A stretch of 64,000 nucleotides of DNA, from assembly GCF_003918875.1 (NCBI RefSeq), contig NW_025766525.1, forward strand, positions 1,178,001 to 1,242,000, in the 5' to 3' direction. Shown here one piece after another: positions 506-49,404 of the stretch. The position numbers were made by a program, and so were the translations under genes. The stretch's first letter is position 1, and each line of letters begins with the position of its first letter. Source of the DNA: Haliotis rubra (taxonomy: Eukaryota). The notes under the pieces were generated by a model. It made no database searches. It saw nothing but the letters and a program-made list of their open reading frames with translations, and had not been told where the DNA came from.

Positions 506-520
506 CTATGAAGTACTCCT

Positions 521-5693: not shown

Positions 5694-6086
5694 AATCTGT
5701 GGTCCACAGTAGTGACACACCTGGAATCAGATCAGCACCAAACACTGGGGTCTGACGACCAACGGGTTAATCTGTGGTCCACAGTAGTGACACACCTGGA
5801 ATCAGATCAGCACCAAACACTGGGGTCTGACGACCAACGGGTTAATCTGTGGTCCACAGTAGTGACACACCTGGAATCAGATCAGCACCAAACACTGGGG
5901 TCTGACAACCAACGGGTTAATCTGTGGTCCACAGTAGTGACACACCTGGAATCAGATCAGCACCAAACACTGGGGTCTGACAACCAACGGGTTAATCTGT
6001 GGTCCACAGTAGTGACACACCTGGAATCAGATCAGCACCAAACACTGGGATCTGATGACTAACGGGTTGATCTGTGGTCCACAGTA
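5694..6086. repeat. 75-bp minisatellite, ~5 copies
   Basis: 25-aa periodicity in ORF 5712..6062; near-identical units. Confidence 0.95.
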
Positions 6087-6499
6087 GGGACTTATCAAAA
6101 CTAAATACCAGAACATTTTCTTGCAAAACAACACCTAAATGCATATATATCTTTGTTACAAACTAATAATGAAAATATTCTTGTCTTAATATATAAAACA
6201 TGCATTAGCAAAAAGAGATCTTCTTATAAAACGAATTGTATACCCTTAAATATATATGTAAATATCCAAAATATCCCTTTATCACTGTAACTCTCATGTA
6301 ACATCTTTTGACTTTTGACTTTGACCCCATGGACGACTTACTGCTGTGAAATGATTGGACAAATGTCCAAACCCGTGTTCACCTACAAATCACCCACCCA
6401 CAAATCAATTATGGCAAATGAAACACCCTTGTGATATCTGCCTTCACAAGCATCTTTTACTGGTTATGAAAAACATATAAACAAAATCTGCACCTAAAG

Positions 6500-6955
6500 G
6501 TATCACTGCATGAGTGAGTGAGATCGTGCATCAAGGGACAACTGGATGTTACCTGCTTCTATAGCCTGAGAAAACCTTTTAATGTGTAACTGCATGAGTG
6601 AGTGAGATCTTGCACCAAGATACAACTGGATATTAGCTGCTTCTATAGCCTGTGTCCTTCAATGTATCACTGCATGAGTGAGTGAGATCTTGCACCAAGA
6701 TACAAATGGATATTACCTGCTTCTATAGCCTGAGAAGACCTTTTAATGTATAACTGCATGGGTGAGTGAGATCGTGCACCAAGGGACAACTGGATATTAG
6801 CTGCTTCTATAGCCTGTGTCCTTCAATGTATAACTGCATGAGAGAGTGAGATCTTGCACCAAGGGACAACTGGATATTAGCTGCTTCTATAGCCTGTGTC
6901 CTTCAATGTATAACTGCATGAGTGAGTGAGATCTTGCACCAAGGGACAACTGTAT
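6500..6955. repeat. 80-86-bp tandem repeat, ~5.5 copies
   Basis: TGCATGAGTGAGTGAGATC...CTATAGCCTG recurring. Confidence 0.9.
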
Positions 6956-7711
6956 GAGGAAACCTATTGTTGCACATTCTATAAGAAAAGGGTAATACTT
7001 GTCGAGATTAGCCTTTTGAACTTGTTATCAACCCCTGTGTGATTTTAAAACTTCAGGATGTTTTAGTTTTTAAGAAAATCGACTTCTTCCTGGCATAAGA
7101 ACAGCCAAGACTGGCAGAGTAATCACCTGGTTAGTGATTCGCGACCCCTGCTGGACGATACAATAGTTCCTGCCCTTGGCAGAACCAGCTGTAGCAGGTA
7201 ATTCAGTTTCAAGCAAAACAATCTGTCTGAGTGCCCCTGCAAGACTATTATTCTCTATTTTTGATAAGTTTCTATCTTGATTGTGCTCAAATAGAACCAT
7301 AAATAGTGTGGTTTCTCTCCCCAACATGGCAGTTAATTTGTTATTATACTTGCCTCAGCAAGGGATGCCATGAATAAAAGATGTTTCTGTCTACCACTGC
7401 TATGGTACTTTCTAATGATTGCAGCCATGTTGAAGAGGTAAAGGCACCATTAGAGCTGCCTCCAGGCCAGATGCCACATGGGGTGTACTTCCTAACATAA
7501 TAGAAACATTCTCTGAAAACATCATGTCATCTTTTCATTATATCAGAAAATAAGAACTGACTGATTTTCGTGATGTCCCTCCATCTAACATGACCAGTGC
7601 TATTTGTAACTTTTTAGGAAGTTTATAAAACAATGTGGCAAGGCAATATGGATGTGTATTTTCAGTTCAGAGTGTACCTCAATCTTCAACACAGAGGCTT
7701 ATAGAATTATT

Positions 7712-8865
7712 TACCTATACACACCTGTATGATGTTACTGTATACGTATACACATCCATACAGTGTTACGGTGTGTTACATCCCTATACACACCTGTATG
7801 ATGTTATTGTATACTTATACACAACCATACAGTGTTACGGTGTGTTACATCCCTATACACACCTGTATGATGTTATTGTATACTTATACACTACCATACA
7901 GTGTTACGGTGTGTTACATCCCTATACACACCTGTATGCTATTAGTGTATACTTATACACAATCATACAGTGTTACGGTGTGCTATATACCTATACACAT
8001 CTGTTGTCTATTATTGTATACTTATACACAACCATACAGTGTTACGGTGTGTTACATCCCTATACACACCTGTATGATGTTATTGTATACTTATACACTA
8101 CCATACAGTGTTACGGTGTGTTACATCCCTATACACACCTGTATGATGTTATTGTATACTTATACACTACCATACAGTGTTACGGTGTGTTACATCCCTA
8201 TACACACCTGTATGCTATTAGTGTATACTTATACACAATCATACAGTGTTACGGTGTGCTATATACCTATACACATCTGTTGTCTATTATTGTATACTTA
8301 TACACAACCATACAGTGTTACGGTGTGTTACATCCCTATACACACCTGTATGATGTTATTGTATACTTATACACAACCATACAGTGTTACGGTGTGTTAT
8401 ATACTTATACACAACCATACAGTGTTACGGTGTGTTACATCCGTATACACACCTGTATGATGTCACTGTATACTTATACACAACCATACAGTGTTACGGT
8501 GTGCTATATACCTATACACACCTGTATGCTATTATTGTATATTTATACACAACCATACAGTGTTACGGTGTGTTACATCCCTATACACACCTGAATGCTA
8601 TTATTGTATACCTATACACAGCCATACAGTGTGTTATATACCTATACACACCTGTATGCTATTTATGTATACTTATCGACAACCATACAGTTTTACAATG
8701 TATTATACCTATACACACCTGTATGATGTTACTGTATACTTATACCCAACCATACGGTGTTACGGAGTGTTACATCCCTATACACACCTGTTTGCTATTA
8801 TTGTATACCTATACACAGCCATACAGTGTGTTATATACCTATACACACCTGTTATATACCTATAC
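7712..8865. repeat. 69-bp minisatellite with a 276-bp higher-order duplication
   Basis: 23-aa periodicity; same variant pair recurs near 7930-8010 and 8205-8290. Confidence 0.9.
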
Positions 8866-9178
8866 AGCTAACTGTGTCTCCAAGACGGGTGACCAGATGG
8901 GCTACACAGTTAACTGTACCTCCAAGACAGGTGACCAGATGGACAACACAGCTAACTGTGCCTCAAAGACAGGTGACCAGATGGGCCACACAGCTAACTG
9001 TGCCTCCAAGACGGGTGACCAGATGGGCTACACAGCTAACTGTGCCTCAAAGACGAGTGTCCAGATGGGCTACACAGCTAACTATGCCTCCAAGACAGGT
9101 GACCAGATGGGCCACACAGCTAACTGTGCCTCCAAGACAGGTGACCAGATGGGCCACACAGCTGACTGTGTGTCCAAG
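8862..9178. repeat. 42-bp minisatellite, ~7.5 copies
   Basis: ACACAGCTAACTGTGCCTCCAAGACAGGTGACCAGATGGGC(C/T) recurring. Confidence 0.95.
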
Positions 9179-9277
9179 AGCTACTTCACGCAGGTGTCTC
9201 TGTTGCTCCACAGGCCTGCGATGTGTGATGAGTAATGCCACGCACAGCAGGCCCAGAAATAACAGCCTGTACTTCAT
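9047..9277 (-). other. Candidate exon/ORF with signal-peptide-like N-terminus, running into the 42-bp array
   Basis: MKYRLLFLGLLCVALLITH; acceptor-like TTCCTTTTATTTTCAG ending at 9314; no homology recognised. Confidence 0.3.
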
Positions 9278-9654
9278 TGAACTGCAGAACTCCAGATTAT
9301 ATTACTGAAGGAACTGAAAATAAAAGGAACCGAAACATTTTATTAATGACTTCATCATGATGTCTCCTATGTCAAGATACTCTCTAACTTTAGAACAAAG
9401 CTATGAGAATTAATAAATCATAAACCATCCCTGAAGAAGATGCTTCCTGTTTCAGATGTTGGAGGAGACATCCCATGATGCTGACTATGATAAAGGGACA
9501 GGATATGTTTGATTGAATTGTACATGGGAGCTGTGGTTTTATTGCACCATTCATCATCATGGCGACACCTATCCTACAGTGCTACATTAATCAACCACTG
9601 AGCCTGGTAGCACACTAGCAATTAACTTCAATAAAATGGATACCGCAGCAAGAC

Positions 9655-9750
9655 AGATCACTAATGTCACACATGGGTACATCAGTAGATCACAGATGTC
9701 ACACATGGGTACATCAGTCAGATCACAGATGTCACACATGGGTACATCAA
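9655..9750. repeat. 33-bp tandem repeat, ~3 copies
   Basis: AGATCACAGATGTCACACATGGGTACATCAGT recurring. Confidence 0.85.
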
Positions 9751-9921
9751 GGTCATGAAGAGCAGAGGAAGGCTATGAAGGCCTCATGGCTACCTTATTC
9801 CAACCTAACACTAATCATATATCTGACATTGCATCTCTCTCATAAAGTGGCACCTTCCGAAGAGGATGGATTTTCATTTATTTACCTTTTTCCATTATTT
9901 ATTACCCTTGGTTGCTAGCAA

Positions 9922-12468
9922 CATGTCAGCATATTGGTATAGAGCCACAGTCAAGGCCCCAAATATTCCTCCACTGCCAGCATATTGGCATAGTGCCACA
10001 GTCAAGGCACCAAATATTCCTCCACTGTCAGCATATTGGCATAGTGCCACGGTCAAGGCACCAAACATTTCTCCACTGTCAGCATATTGGCATAGTGCCA
10101 CGGTCAAGGTCCCAAACATTCCTCCACTGTCAGTATATTGGTATAGTGCCACGGTCAAGGCACCAAACATTCCTCCACTGCCAGCATATTGGCATAGTGC
10201 CACGGTCAAGGTCCCAAACATTCCTCCACTGCCAGCATATTGGTATAGTGCCACGGTCAAGGCACCAAACATTCCTCCACTGTCAGCATATTGGTATAGT
10301 GCCACGGTCAAGGCACCAAACATTCCTCCACTGTCAGCATATTGGTATAGTGCCACGGTCAAGGCACCAAACATTCCTCCACTGTCAGCATATTGGTATT
10401 GGCATAGTGCCACGGTCAAGGCACCAAACATTCCTCCACTGCCAGCATATTGGTATAGTGCCATGGTCAAGGCATTCCTCCAAACATTTCCTCCACTGTC
10501 AGCATATTGGTATAGTCCTCCCACAGTCAAGGCACCAAACATTCCTCCACTGTCAGCATATTGGTATAGTGCCACGGTCAAGGCTCCAAACATTCCTCCA
10601 CTGTCAGCATATTGGTATAGTGCCACGGTCAAGGCACCAAACATTCCTCCACTGCCAGCATATTGGTATAGTGCCACGGTCAAGGCACCAAACATTCCTC
10701 CACTGCCAGCATATTGGTATAGTGCCACGGTCAAGGCACCAAACATTCCTCCACTGCCAGCATATTGGTATAGTGAAACAGTCAAGGCACCAAATATTCC
10801 TCCACTGCCAGCATATTGGTATAGTGCCACGGTCAAGGCACCAAACATTCCTCCACTGTCAGCATATTGGTATAGTGCCACGGTCAAGGCACCAAACATT
10901 CCTCCACTGCCAGCATATTGGCATAGTGCCACGGTCAAGGCACCAAACATTCCTCCACTGTCAGCATATTGGTATAGTGCCACGGTCAAGGCACCAAACA
11001 TTCCTCCACTGTCAGCATATTGGTATAGTGCCACGGTCAAGGCCCCAAACACTGTCAGCATATTTCCACTCCACTGCCAGCATATTGGTATAGTGCCACG
11101 GTCAAGGCACCAAACATTCCTCCACTGTCAGCATATTGGTATAGTACGGTGCAAATTCCTCCACTGTCAACGGTCAAGGCACCAAACATTCCTCCACTGT
11201 CAGCATATTGGCATAGTGCCACGGTCAAGGGCCCAAACATTCCTCCACTGTCAGCATATTGGCATATGCGGTCACGGTCATTCCTCCACTGTCAAACATT
11301 CCTCCACTGTCAGCATATTGGCATAGTGCCACGGTCAAGGCACCAAACATTCCTCAACTGCCAGCATATTGGCATAGGCCACGGTCAAGGCACCAAACAT
11401 TCCTCCACTGTCAGCATATTGGTATAGTGCCACGGTCAAGGCACCAAACATTCCTCCACTGTCAGCATATTGGTATAGAGCCACAGGTGCCACTCAACTG
11501 TCATTCCTCCACTGTGGCATAGTGCCACGGTCAAGGCACCAAACATTCCTCCACTGCCAGCATATTGGCATATTAGAGCCACAGTCAAGGCACCAAATAT
11601 TCCTCCACTGCCAGCATATTGGTATAGAGCCACAGTTAAGGCAGCAAATATTCCTCCACTGTCAGCATATTGGCATAGTGCCACGGTCAAGGCACCAAAC
11701 ATTCCTCCACTGCCAGCATATTGGTATAGTGCCACAGTCAAGGCACCAAATATTCCTCCACTGCCAGCATATTGGTATAGTGCCACAGTCAAGGCCCCAA
11801 ACATTCCTCCACTGCCAGCATATTGGTATAGTGCCACGGTCAAGGCCCCAAACATTCCTCCACTGCCAGCATATTGGTATAGTGCCACAGTCAAGGCACC
11901 AAACATTCCTCCACTGTCAGCATATTGGTATAGTGCCACAGTCAAGGCACCAAACATTCCTCCACTGCCAGCATATTGGTATAGAGCCACAGTCAAGGCA
12001 CCAAACATTCCTCCACTGTCAGCATATTGGTATAGAGCCACAGTCAAGGCACCAAACATTCCTCCACTGTCAGCATATTGGTATAGTGCCACGGTCAAGG
12101 CCCCAAACATTCCTCCACTGCCAGCATATTGGTATAGTGCCACAGTCAAGGCACCAAACATTCCTCCACTGCCAGCATATTGGTATAGTGCCACGGTCAA
12201 GGCACCAAACATTCCTCCGCTGCCAGCATATTGGTATAGTGCCACAGTCAAGGCACCAAACATTCCTCTACTGTCAGCATATTGGTATAGTACCACAGTC
12301 AAGGCACCAAATATTCCTCCACTGCCAGCATATTGGCATAGTGCCACGGTCAAGGCACCAAACATTCCTCCACTGCCAGCATATTGGTATAGTGAAACAG
12401 TCAAGGCACCAAATATTCCTCCACTGCCAGCATATTGGTATAGTGCCAGTCAAGGCACCAAATATTCC
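9922..12468. repeat. 54-bp minisatellite, ~46 copies
   Basis: GCCACGGTCAAGGCACCAAACATTCCTCCACTGYCAGCATATTGGYATAGT core recurring; source of the 320-490 aa repeat ORFs. Confidence 0.93.
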
Positions 12469-13218
12469 TAAACACATTAAACATTAATTTCACTCAATAT
12501 CAAACTGATGGTGTATGACCTTTGTAAAGGTACAGCAGGAAGGCCAGTACAGCTGTTTGTGCCCATGTTGATAATCATCCTTCTTTGTTTGCATATGGAC
12601 CAAAAAGTGCAGTAACCAAGCTCCGACAAACATTGTTTCCAGTTCCAATCTTACAAATCAACACGTTCAACAATATACAAATTTGCACACTGCCCTCATC
12701 TTCCTTGTAGGTAGACGTCTTCTCGCAAACTCTTTCTCATCTCTCATTGCCACGAGGTGCATAGATCATAGCAGACTTGTCAAAACTGACACAGCGGCCT
12801 CCACAGGAAGACTGTAGACTTAATATTTCTCCAACCTAATAAAGGGAGCCATTTGAAGCTTTGGGGCTAATTAAAGCTGCCCTATGAGGACAGGTTGTAG
12901 GACATATTATCTGTTCAACAGAAGTCAAGTCCTGACCTGTCGTCATCAATAATTGATTCTACAATTGGTTATCACTGTAAACGTGGAGCAAAGGAAGTGG
13001 TAGAGTGCTGTGTAAGTTCGGCAGACAGAAGGGTGATTATCGTCTGGCTGTTTTTAGAGAGGAAGGGTGACTTGTCTTGCTATGCAGAAATGGTCTGTCT
13101 TCAACCATACCACTCGCTCATGGCTAACCATCCTGATTTTAGTCTGTATATTTTACTTTAGCAGTTGTTCCTAACAAAGAACTGAAACAATCTGACATGC
13201 TAATGAGTGAGTGAGAAC

Positions 13219-13219
13219 T

Positions 13220-13290
<71 letters not shown>
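13219..13290. repeat. (TACA)n(CA)n(TA)n compound microsatellite
   Basis: Direct inspection. Confidence 0.95.
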
Positions 13291-13291
<1 letters not shown>

Positions 13292-13294
13292 TTA

Positions 13295-13835
13295 TACACT
13301 AATAAAAGCCAAATTTATTTTAAAGAAACATAATTTATCAAATCCTACTGTGTCTAGATTCAACAGAGGTAACTGTGGAACGTGTCGACATATTGCTGAA
13401 GGACACTCTGTAACTTTCACGAGACACGGAGAATTCTATGTAAAACAGAATTTTTACTGCTCTTCCAAAAACATAATATATGTCATAACATGCACAGGCT
13501 GTAATGAACCCGAGTTCGTGTCCACAAACAACAAATAAAGTGTCCTGAAACCCGATGTATCCCACTGAGTGAACATCTAGATGTCTGTGCGAAAGGAAAC
13601 CATATTAAATTTACAATATTTCCTTTTTATCAAGTACAAAATTCGGACAAAGTAAAACGAATTTTAAATGAACACTACTTCATAGACAAGTTCAAACCAA
13701 TGCTAAACCATTGCAAGCTGTGACCTTGTCGCTCTAGAATTTTGTCCATATTGTGACGTCACAATATATATGTAATGACGTCATACTGTAACTGCTACAA
13801 TCTCCCTGAAGAGAAAAAGAACGAAACATATCAGT
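13295..13835 (+). mobile_element. Penelope-like element 3' fragment: GIY-YIG endonuclease remnant plus 3' terminal region
   Basis: CGTC...FYCSSKNIIYVITCTGCNE, then after a deletion/frameshift RVRVHKQQI...SEHLDVC...FTIFPFY...EHYFIDKFKPMLN ending TGA 13721-13723; flanked by microsatellites. Confidence 0.8.
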
Positions 13836-13945
13836 CTGTGTGTGTGCTTGTGTGTGTGAGTGTGGTGAGAGAGAGTGTGTATAATTTCTACAAAGTTGTA
13901 AGTTTTGGTTAACATCAGTGGTGTTACATTGGTAAATCTGTATGT

Positions 13946-15598
13946 TTTGAATGTCCTGACAGATTCCTGTATCTGGCGGACCTTCCACTGGACTGTTGAA
14001 TGTCCTGACAGGCTCCTGTATCTGGTGGACCTTCCACTGGACTGTCGAATGTCCTGACAGATTCCTGTATCTGGTGGACCTTCCACTGGACTGTTGAATG
14101 GCCTGACAGACTCACGTATCTGGCGGACCTTCCACTGGACTGTTGAATGTCCTGACAGACCCCTGTATCTGGCGGACCTTCTACTGGACTGTTGAATGGC
14201 CTGACAGACTCCTGTATCTGGCGGACCTTCTACTGGACTGTTGAATGTCCTAACAGATTCCTGTATCTGGTGGACCTTCCACTGGACTGTTGAATGTCCT
14301 GACAGACTCCTGTATCTGGTGGACCTTCCACTGGACTGTTGAATGTGATGGCAGATTCCTGTATCTGGTGGACCTTCCACTGGACTGTTGAATGTCCTGG
14401 CAGACTCCTGTATCTGGCGGACCTTCCACTGGACTGTTGAATGTCCTGACAGACTCCTGTATCTGGTGGACCTTCCACTGGACTGTTGAGTGTCCTGACA
14501 GGCTCCTGTATCTGGTCGACCTTCCACTGGACTGTTGAATGGCCTGACAGACTCCTGTATCTGGCGGACCTTCTACTGGACTGTTGAATGTCCTGACAGA
14601 TTCCTGTATCTGGTGGACCTTCCACTGGACTGTTGAATGTCCTGACAGATTCCTGTATCTGGTGGACCTTCCACTGGACTGTTGAATGTCCTGACATTCC
14701 TGTATCTGGCGGACCTTCCACTGGACTGTTGAATGTCCTGACAGACTCCTGTATCTGGTGGACCTTCCACTTGACTGTTGAATGTCCTGACAAACTCCTG
14801 TATCTGGTGGACCTTCCACTGGACTGTTGAATGTCCTGACAGGCTCCTGTATCTGGTAGACCTTCCACTGGACTGTTGAATGTCCTGACAAACTCCTGTA
14901 TCTAGTGGACCTTCCACTGGACTGTTGAATGTCCTGACAAACTCCTGTATCTAGTGGACCTTCCACTGGGCTGTTGAATGTCCTGACAGACTCCTGTATC
15001 TGGCGGACCTTCCACTGGACTGTTGAATGTGATGGCAGATTCCTGTATCTGGTGGACCTTCCACTGGACTGTTGAATGTCCTGACAGACTCCTGTATCTG
15101 GCGGACCTTCCACTGGACTGTTGAATGGCCCGACAGACTCCTGTATCTGGTCGACCTTCCACTGGACTGTTGAATGTCCTGACAGACTCCTGTATCTGGC
15201 GGACCTTCCACTGGACTGTTGAATGGCCTGACAGACTCCTGTATCTGGCGGACCTTCCACTGGACTGTTGAATGTCCTGACAGACTCCTGTATCTGGCGG
15301 ACCTTCCACTACACTGTTGAATGTCCTGACAGACTCCTGTATCTGGTGGACCTTCCACTGGACTGTTGAATGTCCTGACAGATTCCTGTATCTGGTGGAC
15401 CTTCCACTCGACTGTTGAATGTTATGGCAAATTCCTGTATCTGGCGGACTTTCCACTGGACTGTTGAATGTCCTGACAGACTCCTGTATCTGGCGGACCT
15501 TCCACTGGACTGTTGAATGTTATGGCAAATTCCTGTATCTGGTGGACCTTCCACTGGACTGTTGATTATCCTGACAGACTCCTGTATCTGGTGGACTG
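13946..15598. repeat. 49-bp minisatellite, ~33 copies
   Basis: TTGAATGTCCTGACAGACTCCTGTATCTGGYGGACCTTCCACTGGACTG. Confidence 0.95.
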
Positions 15599-16125
15599 TG
15601 GATACCTGTAGCTCCTGGACTGTATATCTGTAGATCCTAGACTGCATATCTGTAGCTAGAAAAACTGTATATCTGTAGCTCCTAGACTGTATATTTCAAG
15701 ATCCTAGACTGTACATCTGTAGCTCCTAGACTGTATATCTGTAGCTCCTAGACTGTATATCCATGTATATATGTGTATATCCTTGTCAATATCTGTGTAT
15801 CCTTTTATACATATGTATATCCTTGACTACATCTGTATGTCCTTTTTTATATCTGTATATCCTTGTCTATATCTGTATGTCTTTCTATATCTGTATATCC
15901 TTGTCGATATCTGTATATCCTTGCCAATATCTCTATATCCTTTTCTATATATTTATATCCTTGTCTATATCTGTATATCCTTGTCTATATCTGTATATCC
16001 TTGTCTATATCTCTATATCCTTGACTATATCTCTATATCCTTGTCCATATCTTAATGTGCTTGTCCATATGTCTGTAGATCTTGTATATATCTGTGTATC
16101 CAAGTCTGAATATCTGTATATCCTG
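15598..16125. repeat. 22-bp repeat (TGTATATCTGTAGCTCCTAGAC) grading into 20-bp repeat (TATATCTGTATATCCTTGTC)
   Basis: Direct periodicity; transition near 15762. Confidence 0.9.
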
Positions 16126-16288
16126 GTCAAGAGACATATTTCAGTCCTTTCGGTTAGCCTGATCAGAACAACCAGGATATCCAGACAAATTGGTCACCTA
16201 CTTTCTGAAATATACAACAAATACCTTTCTAACCTGACTTCCCACGGTAGAACACTGCAGTCCACCATATTCCACCTACATCCCAATC

Positions 16289-16349
16289 AAAAGTACTAGA
16301 ATCTGTACTTAACTGAGAAAGTGTAATCCCAAATATAACACATGTTAGA
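16289..16349 (+). repeat. Fragment of the dispersed tRNA-related repeat also at 41063-41455 and 52813-52917
   Basis: AAAGTACTAGAATCTGTACTTAACTGAGAAAGTGTAATCCCAAATATAAC is the reverse complement of ~41348-41397. Confidence 0.85.
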
Positions 16350-16839
16350 TCCCAATCAGTCCATAATACAAGCCAGTGATGTACAGCATGAGCATCAGTT
16401 GGCACCATCAGGTCATGATGACCCACAATCTGACAGGTCATGATGACCCACTATCTGACAGATCACACTACAACACAGGCCTACTACACATGTCAGTGTG
16501 CACACAACACAGATAACATCTCCAGGGACAAGTAAGGAACACAGACTGGTGGCTGTCCCACACCATGATCACTGACACACTGATATCAGCAGCTTATGTG
16601 CATGTCTGGTAGAGGTGTTTCAAGGGTACATATGTATTGAATTTGCTGTGTGTAGGGTGGGTGTGACTATTTATATCATGGACTATATCAGCCAACTCAA
16701 GATATGCACGGGGCATGGGAAAGTAAAGCTTAAGTCCCAGCCTTGGCCACATACAGCAAACATCCAGTTGAATACAAGCTTCATTCTCAAACCATCAAGT
16801 TGTCAAATTGTCAGCTATATGACACAATAATACATGCAT

Positions 16840-18340
16840 GCACATAAACACACCGACACAGACACAGACACAAACACACAGACACGGACATAACACACAG
16901 ACACAGACATAAACAATCAGACATAAACACACAAACAGAAAAACACACACAAACATAAACAAACACACAGACATAACACACAGACACAAACACACAGACA
17001 TAACACACAGACACAGACATAAACACACAGACACAGACACGAACAAACACACAGACACAGACATAACACACAGACACAGACACGAACAAACACACAGACA
17101 TAAACACACAGACACAGAAATAAACACACAGACACAGACATAACACACAGACACAAACACAGACATAACACACAGACACAAACACAGACATAACACAAAG
17201 ACACAGACATAAACACACAGACACAGACACGAACAAACACACAGACACAGACATAACACACAGACACAGACATAAACACACAGACACAGACACGAACAAA
17301 CACACAGACATAAACACACAGACACAGACATAATGCAAAGACACAGACATAAACACACAAACACAGACATAAACACACAGACATAAACACACAAACAGAA
17401 AAACACACACAAACATAAACAAACACACAGACACAAACACAGACATAACACACAGACACAGACACGAACAAACACACAGACATAAACACACAGACACAGA
17501 AATAAACACACAGACACAGACATAACACACAGACACAAACACAGACATAACACACAGACACAGACATAAACACACAGACACAGACACGAACAAACACACA
17601 GACACAGACATAACACACAGACACAGACATAACACACAGACACAGACATAAACACACAGACACAGACACGAACAAACACACAGACATAAACACACAGACA
17701 TAACGCACAGACACAGACATAAACACACAGACACAGACATAAACACACAGACACAGACATAAACACACAGACATGAACACACAGACACAGACATAAACAA
17801 TCAGACACAGACATAAACACACAGACATAAACACACAAACACAGACATAAACACACACAGACATAAACACACAGACATGAACACACAGACACAGACATAA
17901 ACAATCAGACACAGACATAAACAATCAGACACAGACATAAACACACAGACACAGACACAAACATGAACACACAGACACAGACATAAACAATCAGACACAG
18001 ACATAAACAATCAGACACAGACATAAACACACAAACACAGACATAAACACACAGACATAAACAGATAAAAAAAAATATTAAAAAATAAGAAAAACAAAAC
18101 AAAAACAAAACACATAGACATAAACAAACAAACACAAACACTCAGACACAAACTCACAGACACAAACACGGACATAAACACACAGACACAGAGAAACACA
18201 GACATAAACACACACACACATACATAAACACACAGACACAGACAAACACACAGACACATGCACATACAAAATCACACTAATAGACATACACACAAGCATA
18301 GACACACATAAACACACATCACACAGTCAGCACATAAACA
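16840..18340. repeat. Complex CA/GACA/TAAA-rich microsatellite
   Basis: Low complexity; source of the Cys/Val-rich ORFs. Confidence 0.95.
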
Positions 18341-18579
18341 CAAACCACACAGTGCAGCATACAAGATGAAAGTCTCCAAAGGACTTTGCTTTGTTTACCC
18401 AAAAGGTAATAACAGTTCATCAATTTAATGGTTTGTAACTCAAAATGACTTTTGCTTTGATAATGATTGCACCATGAAGGTACCATAACAGTTGAATACA
18501 AGTTTTCTTAGTTTTGTATCTTGTACAATCATGTAAATGATACCCATGCTTTCAGATAGGTCACTCTTCATCATGGTAA

Positions 18580-19716
18580 CAGACCTGACCATGAAGTTAC
18601 AGTAGGTGTCCATCAGAACATGTTCACAGGACAACAGACCTGAACGTTTTTCAGTAGTTTTGTCCAGGTACAGATCATGTAAATGATACCCAGGAGGAAC
18701 ATACCAGAATGTGTGTACACTTCATCATGGTCAGATCAGACCTGAAGCGTGACAACAGTAGGTGTCCAGGTCAGAAGGTGTCCACAGGACAACAGACCTG
18801 AACGTGCTACAGTAGGTGTCCAGGTCAGAACATGTCCTCAGGACAACAGACCTGAACGTGCTACAGTAGGTGTCCTGGTCAGATCATGTCCACAGGACAA
18901 CAGACCTGAACGTGCTACAGTAGGTGTCCTGATCAGATCAACAGTAGGTGTCCAGGTCAGATCAACAGTAGGTGTCCTGGTCAGGTCAACAGTAGGTGCA
19001 GGTCAACAGGTGTCCTGATCAGATCAACAGTAGGTGTCCAGGTCAGAACATGTCCACAGGACAACAGACCTGAACGTGCTACAGTAGGTGTCCAGGTCAG
19101 ATCATGTCCACAGGACAACAGACCTGAATGTGCTACAGTAGGTGTCCAGGTCAGATCATGTCCACAGGACAACAGACCTGAACGTGCTACAGTAGGTGTC
19201 CTGGTCAGATCATGTCCACAGGACAACAGACCTGAAGTACACAGTAGGTGTCCTGGTCAGATCATGTCCACAGGACAACAGACCTGAACGTGCTACAGTA
19301 GGTGTCCAGGTCAGAACATGTTCACAGGACAACAGACCTGAATGTGTTACAGTAGGTGTCCAGGTCAGAACATGTCCACAGGACAACAGACCTGAACGTG
19401 TTACAGTAGGTGTCCTGGTCAGATCATGTCCACAGGACAACAGACCTGAACGTGCTACAGTAGGTGTCCTGGTCAGATCATGTCCACAGGACAACAGACC
19501 TGAATGTGCTACAGTAGGTGTCCTGGTCAGATCATGTCCACAGGACAACAGACCTGAACGTGCTACAGTAGGTGTCCTGGTCAGATCATGTCCACAGGAC
19601 AACAGACCTGAACGTGCTACAGTAGGTGTCCTGGTCAGATCATGTCCACAGGACAACAGACCTGAATGTGCTACAGTAGGTGTCCAGGTCAGATCATGTC
19701 CACAGGACAACAGACT
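18580..19716. repeat. 54-bp minisatellite (ACAGTAGGTGTCCWGGTCAGATCATGTCCACAGGACAACAGACCTGAAYGTGCT) with shortened internal units
   Basis: 18-aa periodicity. Confidence 0.95.
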
Positions 19717-19731
19717 ATATAGGTAATAAAA

Positions 19732-20705
19732 ATATGTTAACAACCCACATCAACTATATAGCTATGATTACAACCCACATTAATAAAAATAACTATGTTT
19801 ACGATCCACATCAACATTATAACTATGTTTACAATCAACATCAACATTATAACTATTGCAACCAACATCAACAATATAACTATGTTAACAACTGTATCAA
19901 CAATAAAGCTATGTTAACAACCATGTCAACAATGTAACTATGTTAACAACCTACACCAACAATATAACTATGCTAACAACCCCCATCAACAATATAACTG
20001 TTAACAACCACACCAACAATATAACTATGTTAACAAACCACATCAACAATATAACTATGTTAACAACCGTATCAACAATATAGCTATGTTAACAACCATG
20101 TCAACAATGTAACTATGTTAACAACCAACTATATAACTATATACTATAACTATATATAACAATATAACTATGTTAACAACCACATCAACAATATAACTTA
20201 TAACAACCACATCAACAATATAACTATGTTAACAACCCACATCAACAATATAACTATGTTAACAACCATATCAACAATAGAACTGTTAACAACCATGTCA
20301 ACAATGTAACTATGTTAACAACCCACATCAACAATGTAACTGTTAACAACCACATCAACAATATAACTATGTTAACAACCCACATCGACAATGTAACTGT
20401 TAACAACCATGTCAACAATGTGACTATGTTAACAACCCACATCGACAATGTAACTGTTAACAACAATGTCAACAATGTAACTATGTTAACAATCCACATC
20501 AACAATATAACTATGTTAACAACCATATCAACAATATAACTGTTAACAACCATGTCAACAATGTAACTATGTTAACAACCCACATCGACAATGTAACTGT
20601 TAACATCCCACATCAACAATATAACTATGTTAACAACCCACATCGACAATGTAACTCTTAACAACCATGTCAACAATGTAACTATGTTAACAACCCATAT
20701 CAACT
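19732..20705. repeat. AAC-rich 27-30-bp minisatellite
   Basis: AACTATGTTAACAACC(C)ACATCAACAATAT variants. Confidence 0.9.
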
Positions 20706-23325: not shown

Positions 23326-23334
23326 AGTGTCAGG

Positions 23335-23689
23335 AATATGTTCATTACACTATATGAATATGTTCTTCACTGTATGAATATGTTCTTCACTGTATGAATA
23401 TGTTCTTCACTGTATGAATATGTTCTTCACTGTATGAATATGTTCTTCACTGTATGAATATGTTCTCCACTGTATGAATATGTTCTTCACTGTATGAATA
23501 AGTTCTTCACTGTATGAATATGTTCTTCACTGTATGAATATGTTCTTCACTGTATGAATATATGTTCTTCACTGTATGAATATGTTCTCCACTGTATGAA
23601 TATGTTCTTCACTGTATGAATATGTTCTCCACTGTATGAATATGTTCTTCACTGTATGAATATGTTCTTCACTGTATGAATATGTTCTT
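23335..23689. repeat. 20-bp minisatellite (TGAATATGTTCTTCACTGTA); other pieces at ~21100-21160 and 30626-30735
   Basis: Direct periodicity; related units on the far sides of both neighbouring insertions. Confidence 0.95.
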
Positions 23690-23885: not shown

Positions 23886-24434
23886 GTGCTTACTACTGTA
23901 TGGGACTCTGAACTGACATTACGACCCAACTTCAAACTTCCACAATGTTCCCCTCTCGTATGTTATATTGATACCAATTCGATTAAAAGAAACAGAGGAG
24001 ACGTGTTTACTTCGCCGGATACAGAAAATAAGAGACAACTATGTTGTTCGGCCCATGTGGAACAAAATGCGACGATGTAGTTGGTTCGTGTGGGGCAAAC
24101 CACGAATTTGTTGGTCGACATCTTGTCTAGGCTGGACAAGGACGATGACGACTTTTCCCCTCTCAAAGAACTCCAGGAGGAAATAGAAAACGTCGAGGAG
24201 GAGCAAGAAGAGACCCATCTGGATATCCAGAAGGTGCGGCAGATGCTAGAATCGATGTAAAAGTGGACCTACCTTTCGATAGCCGCCGTGTTTCTCTGGA
24301 AGGTCGTCTACAAGACCTGGAAGCACAGCACATCCCTGGCCGACAGACCATTCAACAGACAGGCCAACGAGAAGACAGAAATGCCCAAACCTGTTTCCAA
24401 GGTCTACTCCGGGCATCCCCACTACATGCAGTAG
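23886..24434 (+). pseudogene. Decayed ORF: acidic coiled coil, hydrophobic segment and Pro-rich tail (virus/Polinton accessory-like; N-terminus may be LINE ORF1)
   Basis: One frame through stops at 24078-24080 and 24258-24260: ...LLVDILSRLDKDDDDFSPLKELQEEIENVEEEQEETHLDIQKVRQMLESM*KWTYLSIAAVFLWKVVYKTWKH...PKPVSKVYSGHPHYMQ*. Confidence 0.5.
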
Positions 24435-24592
24435 AAAAAAAAATAGAGAGAGAGAGAGATGCGATACATTTTCTTGCAATTGGAATATATATATTTTGTA
24501 CATCGGTTTCGAAAAGCATCGTGTGTGTGTGTGTTTTTTGGGGTTTTTTTTGCGATAGAAGCTTTTCCCGCCCGAGGTCTGGGAGCAGCAAC

Positions 24593-25766
24593 TCAACTTC
24601 TCGATTGTCTTTCCTTTTCGATATGGACGAGTAGCAGATTTTGCCGAGCCTGCTCAGAAACGGTCCACCCACCAACCATAGGTGTCTCTATTCCGCCGGC
24701 GTCTCGAATCGTTTCTCGTATATTGCAGCCGTAGACTGGAATCATTTCTCCAGTTGGCAAATCGAGAAGCAGCAACAGTCAGTTCTTCCCTTCCTATTTC
24801 GCTACGGCAAACTTTTTGCATGTGTAGATTACTTCTGGAACGTCTACGGCTTTTCGGTGTTCGCTGCACGGAGGGACTGCCACTTCCATATCCTTGGGCC
24901 TGCCGTAGTTGGGCAAAGGGGTATGCCATATATTGCTCCGTCCCTGTGGTAGCTCTGCTTTTCCCGATAGCTGTCGGAAGACACAAGAATCTTTCTTCTT
25001 GCACGGACAATTGTCCACCAATTTGTCGAGGAGGAGTGTGTACCGTATGCTCCAGAAAGCGCAGGCGTCGTCGTACAGGTTCTCTATGTTCGAGAAACAA
25101 CCGTCGAACACGATTTCTTCTGGAACCTCGAATGGGAGTCGTTCCTTGGGTGTGTAGTCTATCGCTTTCTTTTTCAAGAGAACGCATTTCTTGCTGTCGA
25201 AGCAGTGGTCGATGGCGCCACACTTGCATGTAGAGTTGTCAGGTCCGAAGAGAGTGGGGAGTTCTGATAGAGCGGCGAGGCAGTCGATGCATCGGTTGTG
25301 TCTGTCCTTGGGGTCCAGGTAGTAGTCGTCGGCGAGAACAATTCGGAGTTTGCCTGCTGCGGGTAGAAATTGGTGGTATGAGTAGATGTAGACGAAATCG
25401 ACTATTTTGCCGTCTTCTACGAGTGGGCTAAAGCACAGCAAATAGAGTTCCAGAAACTGGCGAGGGATTTGGTAGCGGTCGTAGAAAGTGTGTCCCGATT
25501 GCTCCAGGATTTGTTTCTCTCGGTCGGAAAGCAACATAGGGCGACACTTCTCCAGCAGGGTCGAAGAAGAAGGTCTTGAAGACTTCTGCCATGTTGGGAG
25601 TTCTCGTCGTCTGTGGCTTGGGGTCTATACCATCTCGGATTCGTGTATATCTGGTTTGCGATATGTGGTACTTTCTCTTCGCTTCCCGAAGGGACAAACG
25701 ACCTGATCAGATCTCGGTATAGGCTTCACGCGAGAGCTTGGTTCCTGGCATTTTCTCTATATCCAT
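24593..25766 (-). pseudogene. Decayed ~390-aa intronless gene: N-terminal HTH-like segment plus Cys-rich unknown domain
   Basis: MDIEKMPGTKLSREAYTEI*SGRLSLREAKRKYHISQTRYTRIRDG; overlaps the open upstream frame of ORF 24794..25537, which continues in frame past two stops into ORF 24593..24775. Confidence 0.6.
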
Positions 25767-26079
25767 ACACCTGCATAGCTCTAATTGGAGTGCACTTGCA
25801 CTGGGAGACGAAAAGTGGTCTTATCGAAGTTTTGTGCAAAACACTCATTTGTGGGTGGCTGTGGGAGCGGAATTAGCCAGTATGGAAGCTTCTAGGCAGG
25901 GTGCACCTATGCTACTTTTTCTCCCCACTACTATACTACTTTTGATTGGCAACATCTACAGATTTGTTGTTGATAATGCTGTGCTATATCTAACATAACA
26001 CATGAATGACTCATTATCAATCAACATGACTGAATTGACCATATGTACGAAACATGCCCATCCTATATGTGCAGAACAT

Positions 26080-26340
26080 TGTGTGTGTACATACTTAATG
26101 TACACTGAGGACCATATAGTCCATAATTATGTGTGTGTACATACTTAATGTACACTGAGGATCATATAATCCATAATTATGTGTGTGTACATACTTAATG
26201 TACACTGAGGATCATATAGTCCATAATTATGTGTGTGTACATACTTAATGTACACTGAGGATCATATAGTCCATAAGTATGTGTGCGTACATACTTAATG
26301 TACACTGAGGATCATATAGTCCATAATTATGTGTGCATAC
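26080..26340. repeat. 50-bp minisatellite, ~5 copies, inside the composite block
   Basis: GTGTGTGTACATACTTAATGTACACTGAGGATCATATAGTCCATAATTAT. Confidence 0.95.
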
Positions 26341-31965: not shown

Positions 31966-32224
31966 ACCCATGAAGGTCCGGGTTAGAATGAACCTTCAGT
32001 AACCCATGCTTGTCGTAAGAGGCGACTAACGGGATCGGGTGGTCAGGCTCGCTCACTTGGTTGACACATTGGTTCCCAATTCCGCAGATCAATGGTCATG
32101 CTGTTGATCACTGGAATGTCTGGTCAAAAGACTCACTGACTCACTGTGTATTTATAGACCGCCGCCATATAGCTGGAATATTGCTGAGGTGTCTATTGGC
32201 AGTGTAAACATAAACTCTCTCACT
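31966..32224 (+). mobile_element. 5'-truncated Nin-domain-type SINE
   Basis: Core CCTTCAGTAACCCATGCTTGTCGTAAGAGGCGACTAA (Nin-like, from memory); 3' GCTGGAATATTGCTGAG tail; 20-bp TSD ATCTTTATYACTGTGTATGC at 31946-31965 and 32225-32244. Confidence 0.8.
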
Positions 32225-32770
32225 ATCTTTATCACTGTGTATGCTTCCGATATATACCAAGGTGTTCATTGTTCTATCTTTATCAGGCAGTGTATGCTTC
32301 CATACACCACACACCCTGCCAAGGTGTCTATTGTTCTATCTTTATCACATACACCACACATATGCCTTGTTCTATCTTATATTGTGTATGCACATACACC
32401 ACCCTGCCTAGGTGTTCTATTTTATCATTGTGTTTCTATCTTTATCATCTCAGTGTATGCTTCCATACACCACACATACCCTGCCAAGGTGTCTATTGTT
32501 CTATCTTTATCACTGTGTATGCTTCCATACACCACACATACCCTGCCAAGGTGTCTATTGTTCTATCACTATCACAGTGCATGCTTCCATACATCACACG
32601 TACCCTGCCAAGGGGTCTATTGTTCTATCTTTATCACTGTGTATGCTTCCATACACCACACATACCCTGCCAAGGTGTCTATTGTTCTATCTTTATCACA
32701 GTATATGCTTCCATACACCACACGTACCCTGCCAAGGGGTCTATTGTTCTATCTTTATCTACTATCTTTG
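32225..32770. repeat. 62-bp minisatellite starting at the SINE's right TSD
   Basis: TCTATCTTTATCACTGTGTATGCTTCCATACACCACACATACCCTGCCAAGGTGTCTATTGT. Confidence 0.9.
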
Positions 32771-33095
32771 TTTCCAACATCACTGATCAAGGATGTAAAC
32801 ACTGTTTCCAACATCTATGATCAAGGATGTAAACACTGTTTCTAACATCACTATATGATCAAGGATGTAAACACTGTTTCTAACATCACTATATGATCAA
32901 GGATGTAAACACTGTTTCCAACATCACTATATGATCAAGGATGTAAACACTGTTTCCAACATCACTATATGATCAAGGATGTAAACACTGTTTCTAACAT
33001 CACTATATGATCAAGGATGTAAACACTGTTTCTAACATCACTATATGATCAAGGATGTAAACACTGTTTCCAACATCACTATGATCAAGGATGTG
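32770..33095. repeat. 38-bp minisatellite, ~8 copies
   Basis: TGATCAAGGATGTAAACACTGTTTCYAACATCACTATA. Confidence 0.95.
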
Positions 33096-39706: not shown

Positions 39707-39964
39707 TCTTAATCTGTTGTAAAGACACAACACACAGCTGGAAGAACAGGTCTCCATGACGTATCTTACTGTAGCCTTACCACACTATCGATTGAATATC
39801 AACATAAGTGAAAATATCTGTTAAACAATTGCAGCAGTAACTCCTGCAAGCACTGACCTGGATTAGAGATTTGGGGAAAGTGGGAAACCCCAACACAGAC
39901 CCTATACTCAAACTACATCCTTATACAGAGGAGATACGGAATGACCAAGGTTGACTAGATCAAG

Positions 39965-40577
39965 TGCTGCCATGTAGGTGTCCTGTACACATAGCTGCCA
40001 TGTAGGTGTCTTGTGGACAATGCTGCCATGTAGGTGTCCTGTACACATAGCTGCCATGTAGGTGTCCTGTGGACAATACTGCCATGTAGGTGTCCTGTAC
40101 ACATAGCTGCCATGTAGGTGTCTTGTGGACAATGCTGCCATGTAGGTGTCCTGTACACATAGCTGCCATGTAGGTGTCTTGTGGACAATGCTGCCATGTA
40201 GGTGTCTTGTGGACAATGCTGCCATGTAGGTGTCTTGTGGACAATGCTGCCATGTAGGTGTCCTGTACACATAGCTGCCATGTAGGTGTCCTGTACACAT
40301 AGCTGCCATGTAGGTGTCCTGTGGACAATGCTACCATGTTGGTGTCTTGTGGACAATGCTGCCATGTAGGTGTCTTGTGGACAATGCTGCCATATAGGTG
40401 TCCTGAGGACAAAACTGCTATGTAGGTGTCCTGTGGACAATACTGTCATGTAGGTGTCCTGTGGACAATACTGATATGCAGTTGTCCGGTGGACAATACT
40501 GCTATGTAGGTGTCTTGTGGACAATGCTGCCATGTTGGACAATACTGTCTTGTGGTGTCCTGTGGACAATGCTGCCA
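39965..40577. repeat. 28-bp minisatellite with two interspersed unit types
   Basis: GCTGCCATGTAGGTGTC followed by TTGTGGACAAT or CTGTACACATA. Confidence 0.93.
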
Positions 40578-40783
40578 GAGAGAAGTAACAGACTGGTATG
40601 CTGCCTACATTACTAGTGTTGATGAGATAGATCACTAGGAAAGTGATGCCTTTCATAATTTGTCTACATTCAAAATATATTGAACAGAAGTGCTGTTATG
40701 ACATTGGAGTGGTGTGAATTTGGTAAAGAATGTAACTAACAGTTAAATTAGCATTATCAGATGGATAAACAGATGCTGATGGA

Positions 40784-40948
40784 CTGACTGACTGAGTTTG
40801 GTTTTACGCCGCTTTTAGCAATATTCCAGCAACATCACGGCGGGGGACACCAGAAATGGGCCTCACACATTGTACCCATGTGGGGATTCGAACCCGGGTC
40901 TTCGGCGTGACGAGCGGACGCTTTAACCATTAGGCTACCCCACCGCCC
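40784..40948 (-). mobile_element. Full-length tRNA-derived SINE
   Basis: A box TAGCCTAATGG, B box GGTTCGAATCC, (TCAG)n tail; 14-bp TSD CAGATGCTGATGGA at 40770-40783 and 40949-40962. Confidence 0.95.
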
Positions 40949-41062
40949 CAGATGCTGATGGAACAACATATAACACACGTATACCTGGAGAGATACAGAG
41001 AGGTTTACATATTCTGTCGGGAAATACCCCAGAAGCAGAACAGTACAACACTCACGTAACAT

Positions 41063-41455
41063 AGGTTATATTTGGGATTATGCTTTCTCAGTAAAGTACA
41101 CATTCTAGTAACTTTTTTCTTGGGTTGAGTCCCATCGAACCCACACCCTCAGAGTCGGGCACCTAATCGCCAGCACACAAAGTCAGCTGCCAAACCCACT
41201 CAGCCACTGTGGCTTCCACAAAAATGACAACTGGTGGTCTAGGCTGCGGACTTTGTGTAAGCCTATGATACATACAAACTGGTACAGCTCCCACGACCGA
41301 AAGCTATGGATACACAATGCCATTTAGGAAGTAGTCAAATGTAACATGTTATATTTGGGATTACACTTTCTCAGTAAAGTACAGATTCTAGTTCCTTTTT
41401 AGTTGGGTTGAGTCCCATCCGGGACTCGAACCCACAACCTCAGAGTCAGGCACCA
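41063..41455 (-). repeat. Tandem (~285-bp period) tRNA-related repeat with Pol III boxes
   Basis: Minus-strand A-box TGGCTGAGTGG (41196-41206) and B-box GGTTCGAGTCC (41422-41432); GTTATATTTGGGATTA...GGCACC present twice. Confidence 0.7.
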
Positions 41456-41814
41456 AATAAGTACCTTAGACCACTTTCTAAACATCGCTGATGATTTAAA
41501 GCAAGGAAATAGCCCACACAGTTCAGTGTATTTCCTCCATGATATCTTGTTAACTGTTACATTAATATTTGATAGGTAATGATCTTTAGCCTCATGAATA
41601 AAATAAAAAAACTGCCTTAATCAATAAATGAGTGAATCAAGTTTCATGCAGCTGCCAGCAGTGAGCGTCCTCCAGTACCTGACACTGTACCATGATGCCA
41701 CATGCTACCCCCGGGTTATATATGTAAAAACATAAAAACCAATTGTTTTTCAACAATCTCTAAATATTTGTTTTTGGAACTGTGTCCTTAAAGATGCCTG
41801 TAACACAGCTAAAG

Positions 41815-49400: not shown

Positions 49401-49404
49401 TTAC

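What the first reader, a model, noticed from the sequence alone, without database searches (positions are those of the whole stretch)
24593..25766. Reconstructable ~390-aa unknown protein: HTH plus Cys-rich domain
Seen: three track ORFs (25428..25697, 24794..25537, 24593..24775) join with one frameshift and three stops (25707-25709, 24794-24796, 24779-24781). The N-terminus EI(R)SGRLSLREAKRKYHIS resembles Psq/CENP-B-type HTH motifs. The body has CIDC, CKCG...HC...C and CPC...C clusters suggesting metal binding. I recognise no transposase or polymerase motif. Best candidate for an undescribed protein family.
Basis: partly seen in the sequence, partly recalled or inferred. Interest (0 to 1): 0.7.

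Follow-up and report, generated by a model that had tools for sequence, protein, structure and literature searches.

The report
Dead copy of orphan virus-linked gene

Summary
Window 25751-24577 (- strand) is a pseudogene. Its pieces match residues 1-401 of an intact 511-aa natural homologue (P0003; tblastn E 4e-82). There are two frameshifts, not one.

The family is small: 18 representatives among 1.84 billion proteins. It has no Pfam, NCBIfam, PHROG or PDB match. It has an N-terminal three-helix, HTH-like domain (sub-threshold Psq matches), 11 invariant Cys/His and a beta-rich C-terminus.

The gene is not alone. On the + strand, 24081-24437 is a remnant of a convergent 198-aa partner gene with a paralogous HTH, a coiled coil and a membrane anchor. 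On intact 4.2-5.8 kb contigs the pair is followed by a 524-aa gene. That gene's confident model (pLDDT 90) matches African swine fever virus M448R (Foldseek E 3e-34) and the abalone asfa-like virus homologue.

The whole thing is a roughly 2 kb GC-rich island among satellites and retrotransposons. My best reading is a decayed fragment of a cassette derived from or associated with a giant virus. No copy of the 511-aa or 198-aa family has been found in any viral genome. Function is inferred only.

The parts
23900..25950 (.). GC-rich island (about 0.43-0.53 GC) between AT-rich flanks (0.25-0.36) that carry tandem repeats. It holds both pseudogenes.
   Evidence: Composition profile. Tandem arrays at 23334-23689 and 26080-26335. 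No inverted terminal repeats around it.
25779..25788 (-). Upstream motif CCAATTAGAG, 28-37 nt before the ATG at 25751. The same 10-mer lies 54-74 nt upstream of the start codon of the homologous gene on contigs L002, L003, L005 and L004.
   Evidence: one match in the window, 0.1 expected by chance; aligned upstream regions.
25623..25751 (-). N-terminal segment of the 511-aa-family pseudogene (aa 1-43 of P0003): HTH-like domain, interrupted by a stop at 25707-25709.
   Evidence: tblastn, 70% identity. Translation. Alignment A6.
25561..25622 (-). Zone that contains the first frameshift, in a poorly conserved linker.
   Evidence: HSP ends at 25623 and 25588 in different frames. Translations.
24797..25588 (-). 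Body: conserved helical region and Cys/His clusters (CxDC, CxCG..HC..S..C, C..W..R, CPC....C). It ends at the stop 24794-24796.
   Evidence: tblastn aa 49-365. phmmer E 4e-58. Invariant Cys/His columns.
24686..24793 (-). Same frame as the body after two stops (24794-24796, 24779-24781): start of the beta-rich C-terminal domain.
   Evidence: Translation. Alignment with P0003 and P0001.
24682..24686 (-).
   Evidence: tblastn HSPs 25588-24686 (frame -1) and 24681-24577 (frame -2). Translations.
24577..24681 (-). Last homologous segment (aa 367-401 of P0003), in a third frame. Homology ends here.
   Evidence: tblastn, 49% identity. hmmsearch with the family profile, E 7e-8.
24438..24576 (.). Spacer of about 140 nt between the two convergent gene ends. 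It now holds poly-A/C, (CA)n and (TC)n runs. The intact contig L002 has 172 nt between the two stop codons.
   Evidence: Sequence. Gene coordinates on L002.
24081..24437 (+). Remnant of the convergent 198-aa partner gene: coiled-coil part, membrane helix and natural C-terminal tail. There are stops at 24078-24080 and 24258-24260. The N-terminal HTH half (aa 1-91) is absent.
   Evidence: tblastn aa 92-168, E 4e-12. Read-through translation shows the membrane helix and tail in register with the L003 protein. BLASTP.

Best explanation
The locus is a decayed fragment of about 1.7-2 kb of a compact, intron-less gene cassette that entered a mollusc-like genome. The most likely source is a large DNA virus of the asfarvirus-related kind, or an element that travels with such viruses.

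In intact form the cassette has three genes. (a) A 414-511-aa protein with an N-terminal Psq-like helix-turn-helix, a helical region, two conserved Cys/His clusters that probably hold zinc, and one or two beta-rich C-terminal domains. (b) A convergent 198-aa protein with a paralogous helix-turn-helix, a coiled coil and a C-terminal membrane anchor. (c) A 524-aa protein with the RNA-ligase fold of ASFV M448R.

Inferred mechanism: (a) is a sequence-specific DNA-binding protein, either a regulator or a genome-binding factor. It reads DNA with the HTH, and the zinc module and beta domains add nucleic-acid or protein contacts. (b) recognises related DNA through the same type of HTH and ties it to a membrane.

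What is shown: the gene structure, the homology, the conservation of Cys/His, the gene linkage, and the fold of (c). What is inferred: DNA binding, zinc binding, and the viral origin of (a) and (b). The window copy has three stops and two frameshifts and its partner has lost its N-terminal half, so nothing here is functional.
For: The pseudogene matches one intact ORF. The (a)+(b) convergent pair recurs in three diverged lineages: L002/L003/L005, the window at about 45% aa identity, and L022. (a) and (c) lie together on L002/3/5, and a fragment of (a) lies 3.5 kb from (c) on L011. The two HTH N-termini are paralogous (tblastn E 2e-4; profile E 1e-3). The model of (c) has pLDDT 90. Foldseek matches it to ASFV M448R at E 3e-34 with TM 0.73/0.85, to the abalone asfa-like virus homologue at E 1e-19, and to T4 Rnl1 in the PDB at E 4e-7. 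Relatives of (c) sit on 135-270 kb IMG/VR giant-virus contigs and on 14-34 kb contigs beside a poxvirus/mimivirus-type poly(A) polymerase. Copies of (c) on Mb-scale eukaryote-like contigs form one group nested among the viral ones. On intact contigs the cassette is compact (172-176 nt spacers), intron-less, has all three ORFs open, and carries one shared 19-nt motif upstream of (b) and (c). The window copy is a GC-rich island in AT-rich, repeat-filled host-like DNA. For the HTH. For the invariant Cys/His.
Against: No relative of (a) or (b) was found in any viral genome. This covers IMG/VR pattern scans, the 10 kb on each side of the M448R-like gene on 13 viral-looking contigs, and JGI metagenomes. 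Many genomic copies of (a) are solo: homology stops at the ORF ends, with no (b) or (c) nearby (L009, L010, L023). Within L002, (a) has about 0.50 GC and (b)+(c) about 0.60-0.65, which hints at different histories. The cassette's copy of (c) sits on a long branch outside the clade of genome-embedded copies. The structure model of (a) is poor (pLDDT 55) and found no fold match, so the function rests on sequence features. The intact contigs may themselves be pieces of an animal genome rather than of a virus.
Confidence: 0.55

Rival explanations
1. The 511-aa protein is the DNA-binding or transposition protein of an undescribed DNA transposon of molluscs. That element sometimes carries the 198-aa gene and a captured giant-virus M448R-like gene. 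The window holds a dead, partial copy.
For: There are many dispersed, independently decayed copies on Mb-scale contigs of one assembly, often solo. The N-terminal Psq-like HTH is typical of pogo/Tc1-type transposases. A short upstream motif is conserved. Short-read contigs of the intact cassette break at the same points next to repeats, as happens with multicopy elements. L022 has tail-to-tail duplicated copies.
Against: There is no DDE/RNase H, tyrosine- or serine-recombinase, HUH or polymerase signature by Pfam or by fold search. No terminal inverted or direct repeats flank the island in the window or lie on L003/L005. Homology between copies ends at the ORF, so no element ends can be defined.
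Confidence: 0.2
2. It is a pseudogene of an ordinary lineage-specific host gene family (a zinc-finger/HTH regulator) of molluscs, and its adjacency to the M448R-like gene is coincidental or secondary.
For: The family is seen only in mollusc-associated data: a Haliotis rubra gene model, contigs binned with lucinid-clam symbionts, and Mb-scale contigs. It was not found in any viral collection.
Against: The gene is intron-less and forms a GC-rich island unlike its flanks. The convergent pairing with the 198-aa gene recurs at about 40-50% protein identity, and linkage to the M448R-like gene was seen twice. Nearly all genomic copies are broken. The only annotated instance is an exonised fragment inside an unrelated EGF-like gene model.
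Confidence: 0.15
3. The apparent protein is a chance run of ORFs in a GC-rich stretch.
For: Stops and frameshifts interrupt it.
Against: Matches to independent sequences from other samples reach E 4e-58 to 4e-82 and are collinear over about 400 residues.
Confidence: 0.01

Closest known systems
Endogenous viral elements from Nucleocytoviricota (giant-virus inserts in eukaryote genomes), especially asfarvirus-related ones (ASFV; abalone asfa-like virus)
   Same: A foreign, intron-less, compositionally distinct island in host repeats, carrying disabling mutations. In intact relatives the neighbouring gene has the fold of ASFV M448R and of its abalone-virus homologue. Genome-embedded copies of that gene are nested among giant-virus copies.
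   Different: The two genes actually present in the window have no detectable homologue in any virus genome searched. No hallmark giant-virus gene (capsid, polymerase, packaging ATPase) lies near any copy. The unit is only about 4 kb, not the tens to hundreds of kb usual for such inserts.
Psq/CENP-B/pogo-type helix-turn-helix DNA-binding domains (Pfam HTH_psq PF05225, HTH_28, HTH_23)
   Same: An N-terminal three-helix unit of about 35 residues, with recurrent weak matches to these models.
   Different: Every match is below Pfam's threshold. No DDE transposase domain follows, and the rest of the protein (Cys/His clusters, beta domains) matches nothing.
ASFV pM448R / T4 Rnl1-type RNA ligases (this applies to the linked 524-aa gene, which is absent from the window)
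   Same: The same fold with high confidence. The literature also describes pM448R as Rnl1-like with unproven ligase activity (PMC13386975).
   Different: In 47 aligned family members no lysine is conserved at 90% or more, and the position of the motif-I lysine before the invariant D-G-T is hydrophobic. Canonical covalent nucleotidyl transfer is therefore doubtful.

Membership tests
Pfam HTH_psq / homeodomain-like HTH | Significant match to the family profile | tested here: inconclusive
   4 of 10 N-termini match HTH_psq with best E 0.013, and 2 of 10 match HTH_28 with best E 0.0062. All are below the gathering score.
Pfam HTH_psq / homeodomain-like HTH | Three-helix bundle with a recognition helix | tested here: met
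   The AF2 model of P0003 has helices 8-16, 21-28 and 32-39 at pLDDT 72-84. The rest of the model is poor.
pogo/Tc1-mariner or other DDE transposases | RNase H-like DDE catalytic domain after the HTH | tested here: not met
   No Pfam match at E up to 10. Foldseek found no integrase or transposase match better than E 0.45.
DNA transposon (any superfamily) | Terminal repeats and target-site duplication bounding the copies | tested here: not met
   No inverted repeats flank the island or lie on L003/L005. Homology between copies ends at the ORF. Target-site duplications are not assessable without defined ends.
Known zinc-finger/zinc-ribbon families (THAP, CxC of KDZ transposases, C2H2 and others) | Profile match to the Cys/His module | tested here: not met
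   No Pfam, NCBIfam or PDB-profile match. The 11 invariant Cys/His residues are.
Zinc-binding protein (generic) | Bound metal | not testable with these tools
   Only the conservation of the ligand pattern is shown. The model is disordered in this region.
Endogenous viral element | Homologue in an exogenous virus genome | tested here: not met
   This holds for the two genes in the window: none was found in IMG/VR or near M448R-like genes on viral contigs. The feature is met only for the linked 524-aa gene.
Endogenous viral element | Host-type flanks and disabling mutations | tested here: met
   Satellites, a LINE-type RT and a Tc1-like fragment lie in the window. There are three stops and two frameshifts.
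ASFV M448R / Rnl1-like ligase family (the linked gene) | Shared fold | tested here: met
   Foldseek E 3e-34 with TM 0.73/0.85 to P0CAH4, and E 4e-7 to T4 Rnl1.
ASFV M448R / Rnl1-like ligase family (the linked gene) | Catalytic motif-I lysine | tested here: not met
   There is no Lys among the invariant or 90%-conserved columns of 47 sequences. The residue two places before the invariant Asp is V, M or I. I did not check whether ASFV M448R itself has the lysine.

The most novel reading that the evidence does not exclude
The three-gene unit is a small, self-contained mobile or satellite-like genetic element of marine molluscs, or of their giant viruses. Its parts are an HTH-zinc protein, a membrane-anchored HTH protein and a lysine-less RNA-ligase-fold protein. 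Its own proteins are all undescribed, and the HTH-zinc protein would act as its DNA-recognition or integration factor by a chemistry not yet known.
Probability: 0.15. Interest if true: 0.8.

Novelty: new variant of a known kind. Interest (0 to 1): 0.5.

Why it matters
The window copy is dead, so it does nothing for its carrier. Its value is as a pointer in three ways.

First, it leads to an undescribed protein family with intact natural members that can be expressed and tested.

Second, it leads to a recurring gene cassette that ties that family to a gene otherwise typical of asfarvirus-like giant viruses. Known viruses of that kind include the abalone asfa-like virus, proposed as the cause of abalone amyotrophia (PMC7067878). 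If the cassette is viral, it marks past infections of molluscs by viruses not yet isolated, and it adds two new genes to their repertoire.

Third, it flags annotation errors. A fragment of the family is exonised in a Haliotis rubra 'fibropellin-1-like' model. Members are also filed under bacterial symbiont MAGs of lucinid clams.

Tried and rejected
- Pfam on the window pieces and on six homologues found nothing above threshold.
- NCBIfam and PHROGs found nothing, apart from a chance-level holin match for the 198-aa protein.
- PDB by sequence and by family profile found nothing.
- The AlphaFold2 model of P0003 with a 23-row alignment was poor (pLDDT 55). Foldseek of it against the PDB gave no match below E 0.1. 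The top rows include several tandem OB-fold or HIN DNA-binding domains, but at probabilities of 0.14 or less, so this is only a lead.
- Scans for the family in IMG/VR (three queries) and in JGI metagenomes (two queries) found nothing. One call failed because the alignment was too gappy.
- Profile search of six-frame translations around M448R-like genes on 13 viral-looking contigs found nothing.
- Rfam on the whole window found nothing.
- The search for terminal repeats or circular overlap on the intact contigs found none. The 133-nt perfect inverted repeat at the end of L002 may be an assembly artefact.
- An internal repeat of the C-terminal beta domain is only weakly supported (E 0.024).
- The literature has nothing on this cassette.
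- I considered and dropped an intron between the HTH and the body. The intact homologues read straight through.

Full report
**1. What is in the sequence**

The window is repeat-rich eukaryotic DNA. It holds many minisatellites, a LINE-type reverse transcriptase (43119-44279) and a Tc1-like fragment (59272-59835). It has no Rfam match. The finding lies in a GC-rich island of about 2 kb, at roughly 23900-25950. The island has 0.43-0.53 GC and its flanks have 0.25-0.36. Tandem arrays border it at 23334-23689 and 26080-26335.

**2. Is it one gene?**

Yes.
- The 247-aa body alone finds 18 representatives among 1.84 billion proteins, with best E 4e-58.
- One hit, P0003, is an uninterrupted 511-aa ORF.
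- tblastn of P0003 against the window gives three collinear pieces: 25751-25623 (aa 1-43), 25588-24686 (aa 49-365) and 24681-24577 (aa 367-401). They lie in three frames, with joint E 4e-82.

So there are two frameshifts, not one.
- The first lies in a weakly conserved linker, somewhere in 25561-25623.
The second half of ORF 24593..24775 is therefore out of frame. The true continuation is in the frame of ORF 24352..24675.

Homology ends at about 24577. P0003 and the copy on L009 have about 110 further residues. The Tara Oceans homologue P0001 and the clam-associated P0026 and P0027 do not. The window copy may therefore be complete for its own lineage.

**3. The protein family**

No Pfam, NCBIfam, PHROG or PDB match exists, by sequence or by profile.

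- N-terminus. It is highly conserved (alignment A6). It is modelled as three short helices at pLDDT 72-84. Its most frequent sub-threshold Pfam matches are HTH_psq (4 of 10 members, best E 0.013) and HTH_28.
- Cys/His clusters. Eleven Cys/His are invariant in seven diverged members. In P0003 numbering they are C148, C151, C171, C173, H178, C179 and C185, then C227, C245, C247 and C252. That is enough for two or three metal sites.
- C-terminus. It is beta-rich, and in P0003 it is weakly duplicated (E 0.024).
- Whole-protein model. It is poor (pLDDT 55), and Foldseek against the PDB found nothing significant. The function of the middle and C-terminal parts is therefore inferred from sequence alone.

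**4. The surroundings: a partner gene**

The intact homologue lies on three short contigs, L002, L003 and L005 (4.2-5.8 kb). The biosample of L005 is a marine-biofilm metagenome.

All three contigs have the same three genes:
- the 511-aa gene;
- a convergent 198-aa gene, 172 nt away;
- a 524-aa gene, 176 nt upstream of the 198-aa gene on the same strand.

The 198-aa protein starts with an HTH paralogous to that of the 511-aa protein. A coiled coil, one membrane helix and a short tail follow.

The window carries this partner too. On the + strand, 24081-24437 reads through one stop (24258-24260). It matches the coiled-coil part, the membrane helix and the natural C-terminal tail, in register with the L003 protein. 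The partner's N-terminal half is missing. The spacer between the two gene ends is about 140 nt and is now filled with microsatellite.

The same convergent pairing recurs on L022, in a third lineage. A 10-nt motif, CCAATTAGAG, lies shortly upstream of the 511-aa gene's start in the window and on L002-L005. On L002 a different 19-nt motif precedes both the 198-aa and the 524-aa genes.

**5. The third gene points to giant viruses**

The 524-aa protein has a large family with no Pfam domain: 63 hits. With 47 sequences AlphaFold2 gives a confident model, pLDDT 90 and pTM 0.88.

Foldseek finds the following:
- in the PDB, the T4 Rnl1, archaeal Rnl3 and Trl1 RNA-ligase fold (E 4e-7);
- in BFVD, African swine fever virus 'putative RNA-ligase' M448R (E 3e-34, TM 0.73/0.85, 27% identity);
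- in BFVD, the 'PM448R homolog' of abalone asfa-like virus (E 1e-19).

A 2026 paper likewise describes pM448R as Rnl1-like, with unproven ligase activity (PMC13386975).

Relatives sit on IMG/VR giant-virus contigs of 135-270 kb. They also sit on 14-34 kb contigs next to a large unannotated gene on the opposite strand and a mimivirus/poxvirus-type poly(A) polymerase. From my memory of the ASFV map this resembles M1249L-M448R-...-C475L. I could not verify that here.

In a quick IQ-TREE, the 12 copies from Mb-scale eukaryote-like contigs form one group (SH-aLRT 99). The group is nested among copies from viral and 10-270 kb contigs, and the viral-looking L008 copy is its sister. This fits virus-to-host transfer. 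The tree is unrooted and is the quick version, because the careful search did not finish.

No lysine is conserved in this family, and the motif-I lysine position is hydrophobic. Canonical ligase chemistry is therefore doubtful.

**6. What speaks against a simple 'viral insert'**

- Neither gene present in the window has a relative in any viral data I could search or in JGI metagenomes.
- Many genomic copies of the 511-aa gene are solo, with homology confined to the ORF.
- Within L002 the 511-aa gene is about 0.50 GC and the other two are about 0.60-0.65.
- No terminal repeats bound the island.

I therefore keep a transposon-like reading and a host-gene reading as rivals.

**7. Where the family lives**

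The named hits are:
- a Haliotis rubra gene model, 'fibropellin-1-like', which contains an exonised fragment (65% identity over 63 aa);
- proteins filed under bacterial symbionts of the lucinid clams Ctena and Codakia, on 1.5-2 kb contigs. I take these for host DNA binned by mistake.

The rest come from Tara Oceans, marine biofilm and one assembly with Mb-scale contigs rich in retrotransposons. I infer that the carrier of the window is a mollusc. I did not establish which one.

**8. Verdict**

The window copy is a dead fragment. It is half of a convergent gene pair, and that pair belongs to a three-gene cassette linked to an asfarvirus-type gene. Viral or virus-associated origin is my best explanation, at confidence 0.55. 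DNA and zinc binding are inferred.

**9. Constraint kept**

The locus may derive from a relative of an animal virus. For that reason I built no mended, consensus or ancestral version of the broken gene and do not say what would mend it. All folding and searching used natural intact homologues or the separate pieces by reference.

Noticed in passing
window 24081-24437 (+): Remnant of a second gene of the 198-aa family, convergent with the finding. Its membrane helix and C-terminal tail are conserved. It has in-frame stops at 24078-24080 and 24258-24260, and its N-terminal HTH half is missing.
   Followed up: yes
window 25779-25788 (-); L002 1065-1074 and 1112-1121; L003 16-25; L004 4370-4379; L005 92-101 and 139-148: The 10-mer CCAATTAGAG is conserved 28-74 nt upstream of the start codon of the 511-aa gene, in lineages only 45-65% identical in protein. 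It may be a promoter element.
   Followed up: partly
L002 3497-3519 and 5264-5286, and the same sites on L003 and L005: A shared motif of about 19-23 nt (core CTCTCTAGATGTGGGAAAG) lies just upstream of both the 198-aa and the 524-aa genes. Beyond it L002 has a 21-nt repeat array and a perfect 133-nt inverted repeat (5168-5300 / 5662-5794) that re-copies the start of the 524-aa gene. This could be a true palindrome or an assembly artefact.
   Followed up: partly
alignment A3 (47 members of the M448R-like family); P0028 residues 164-169: The family has the RNA-ligase fold, but no lysine is conserved at 90% or more. The residue at the motif-I lysine position is V, M or I. The family may be a pseudo-enzyme or use another chemistry.
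   Followed up: partly
L006 676-16413, L007, L008: Contigs of 14-34 kb carry, in order, a large (1493-aa) gene without Pfam hits on the opposite strand, the M448R-like gene, and further on a poly(A) polymerase (PF19244, fused to a TTL domain on L006). From memory, the order recalls ASFV M1249L-M448R-...-C475L.
   Followed up: partly
P0002 (Haliotis rubra 'fibropellin-1-like'), residues 179-241: An annotated EGF-like gene model contains an exonised fragment of this family and then runs into unrelated sequence. This is probably an annotation artefact.
   Followed up: partly
P0027 and P0047 (NCBI MAG proteins of lucinid-clam symbionts): Members of the 511-aa and M448R-like families are filed under gammaproteobacterial symbiont MAGs, on contigs of 1.5-2.1 kb. 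In the tree P0047 is almost identical to copies on Mb-scale eukaryote-like contigs, so this is likely host DNA in the bins.
   Followed up: partly
L022 7464-9971: Two copies of the 511-aa gene lie tail to tail. A piece of the 198-aa gene's membrane helix and tail is fused in frame to the first copy (gene model P0012).
   Followed up: partly
L002 1201-5400: GC content steps up inside the intact cassette: about 0.47-0.53 over the 511-aa gene against 0.56-0.67 over the other two genes.
   Followed up: no
window 1-20000, 32000-33000, 39900-42900, 48700-49500, 55100-55900: Very long minisatellite arrays give spurious ORFs of 150-490 aa on both strands. Much of the window is tandem repeat.
   Followed up: no
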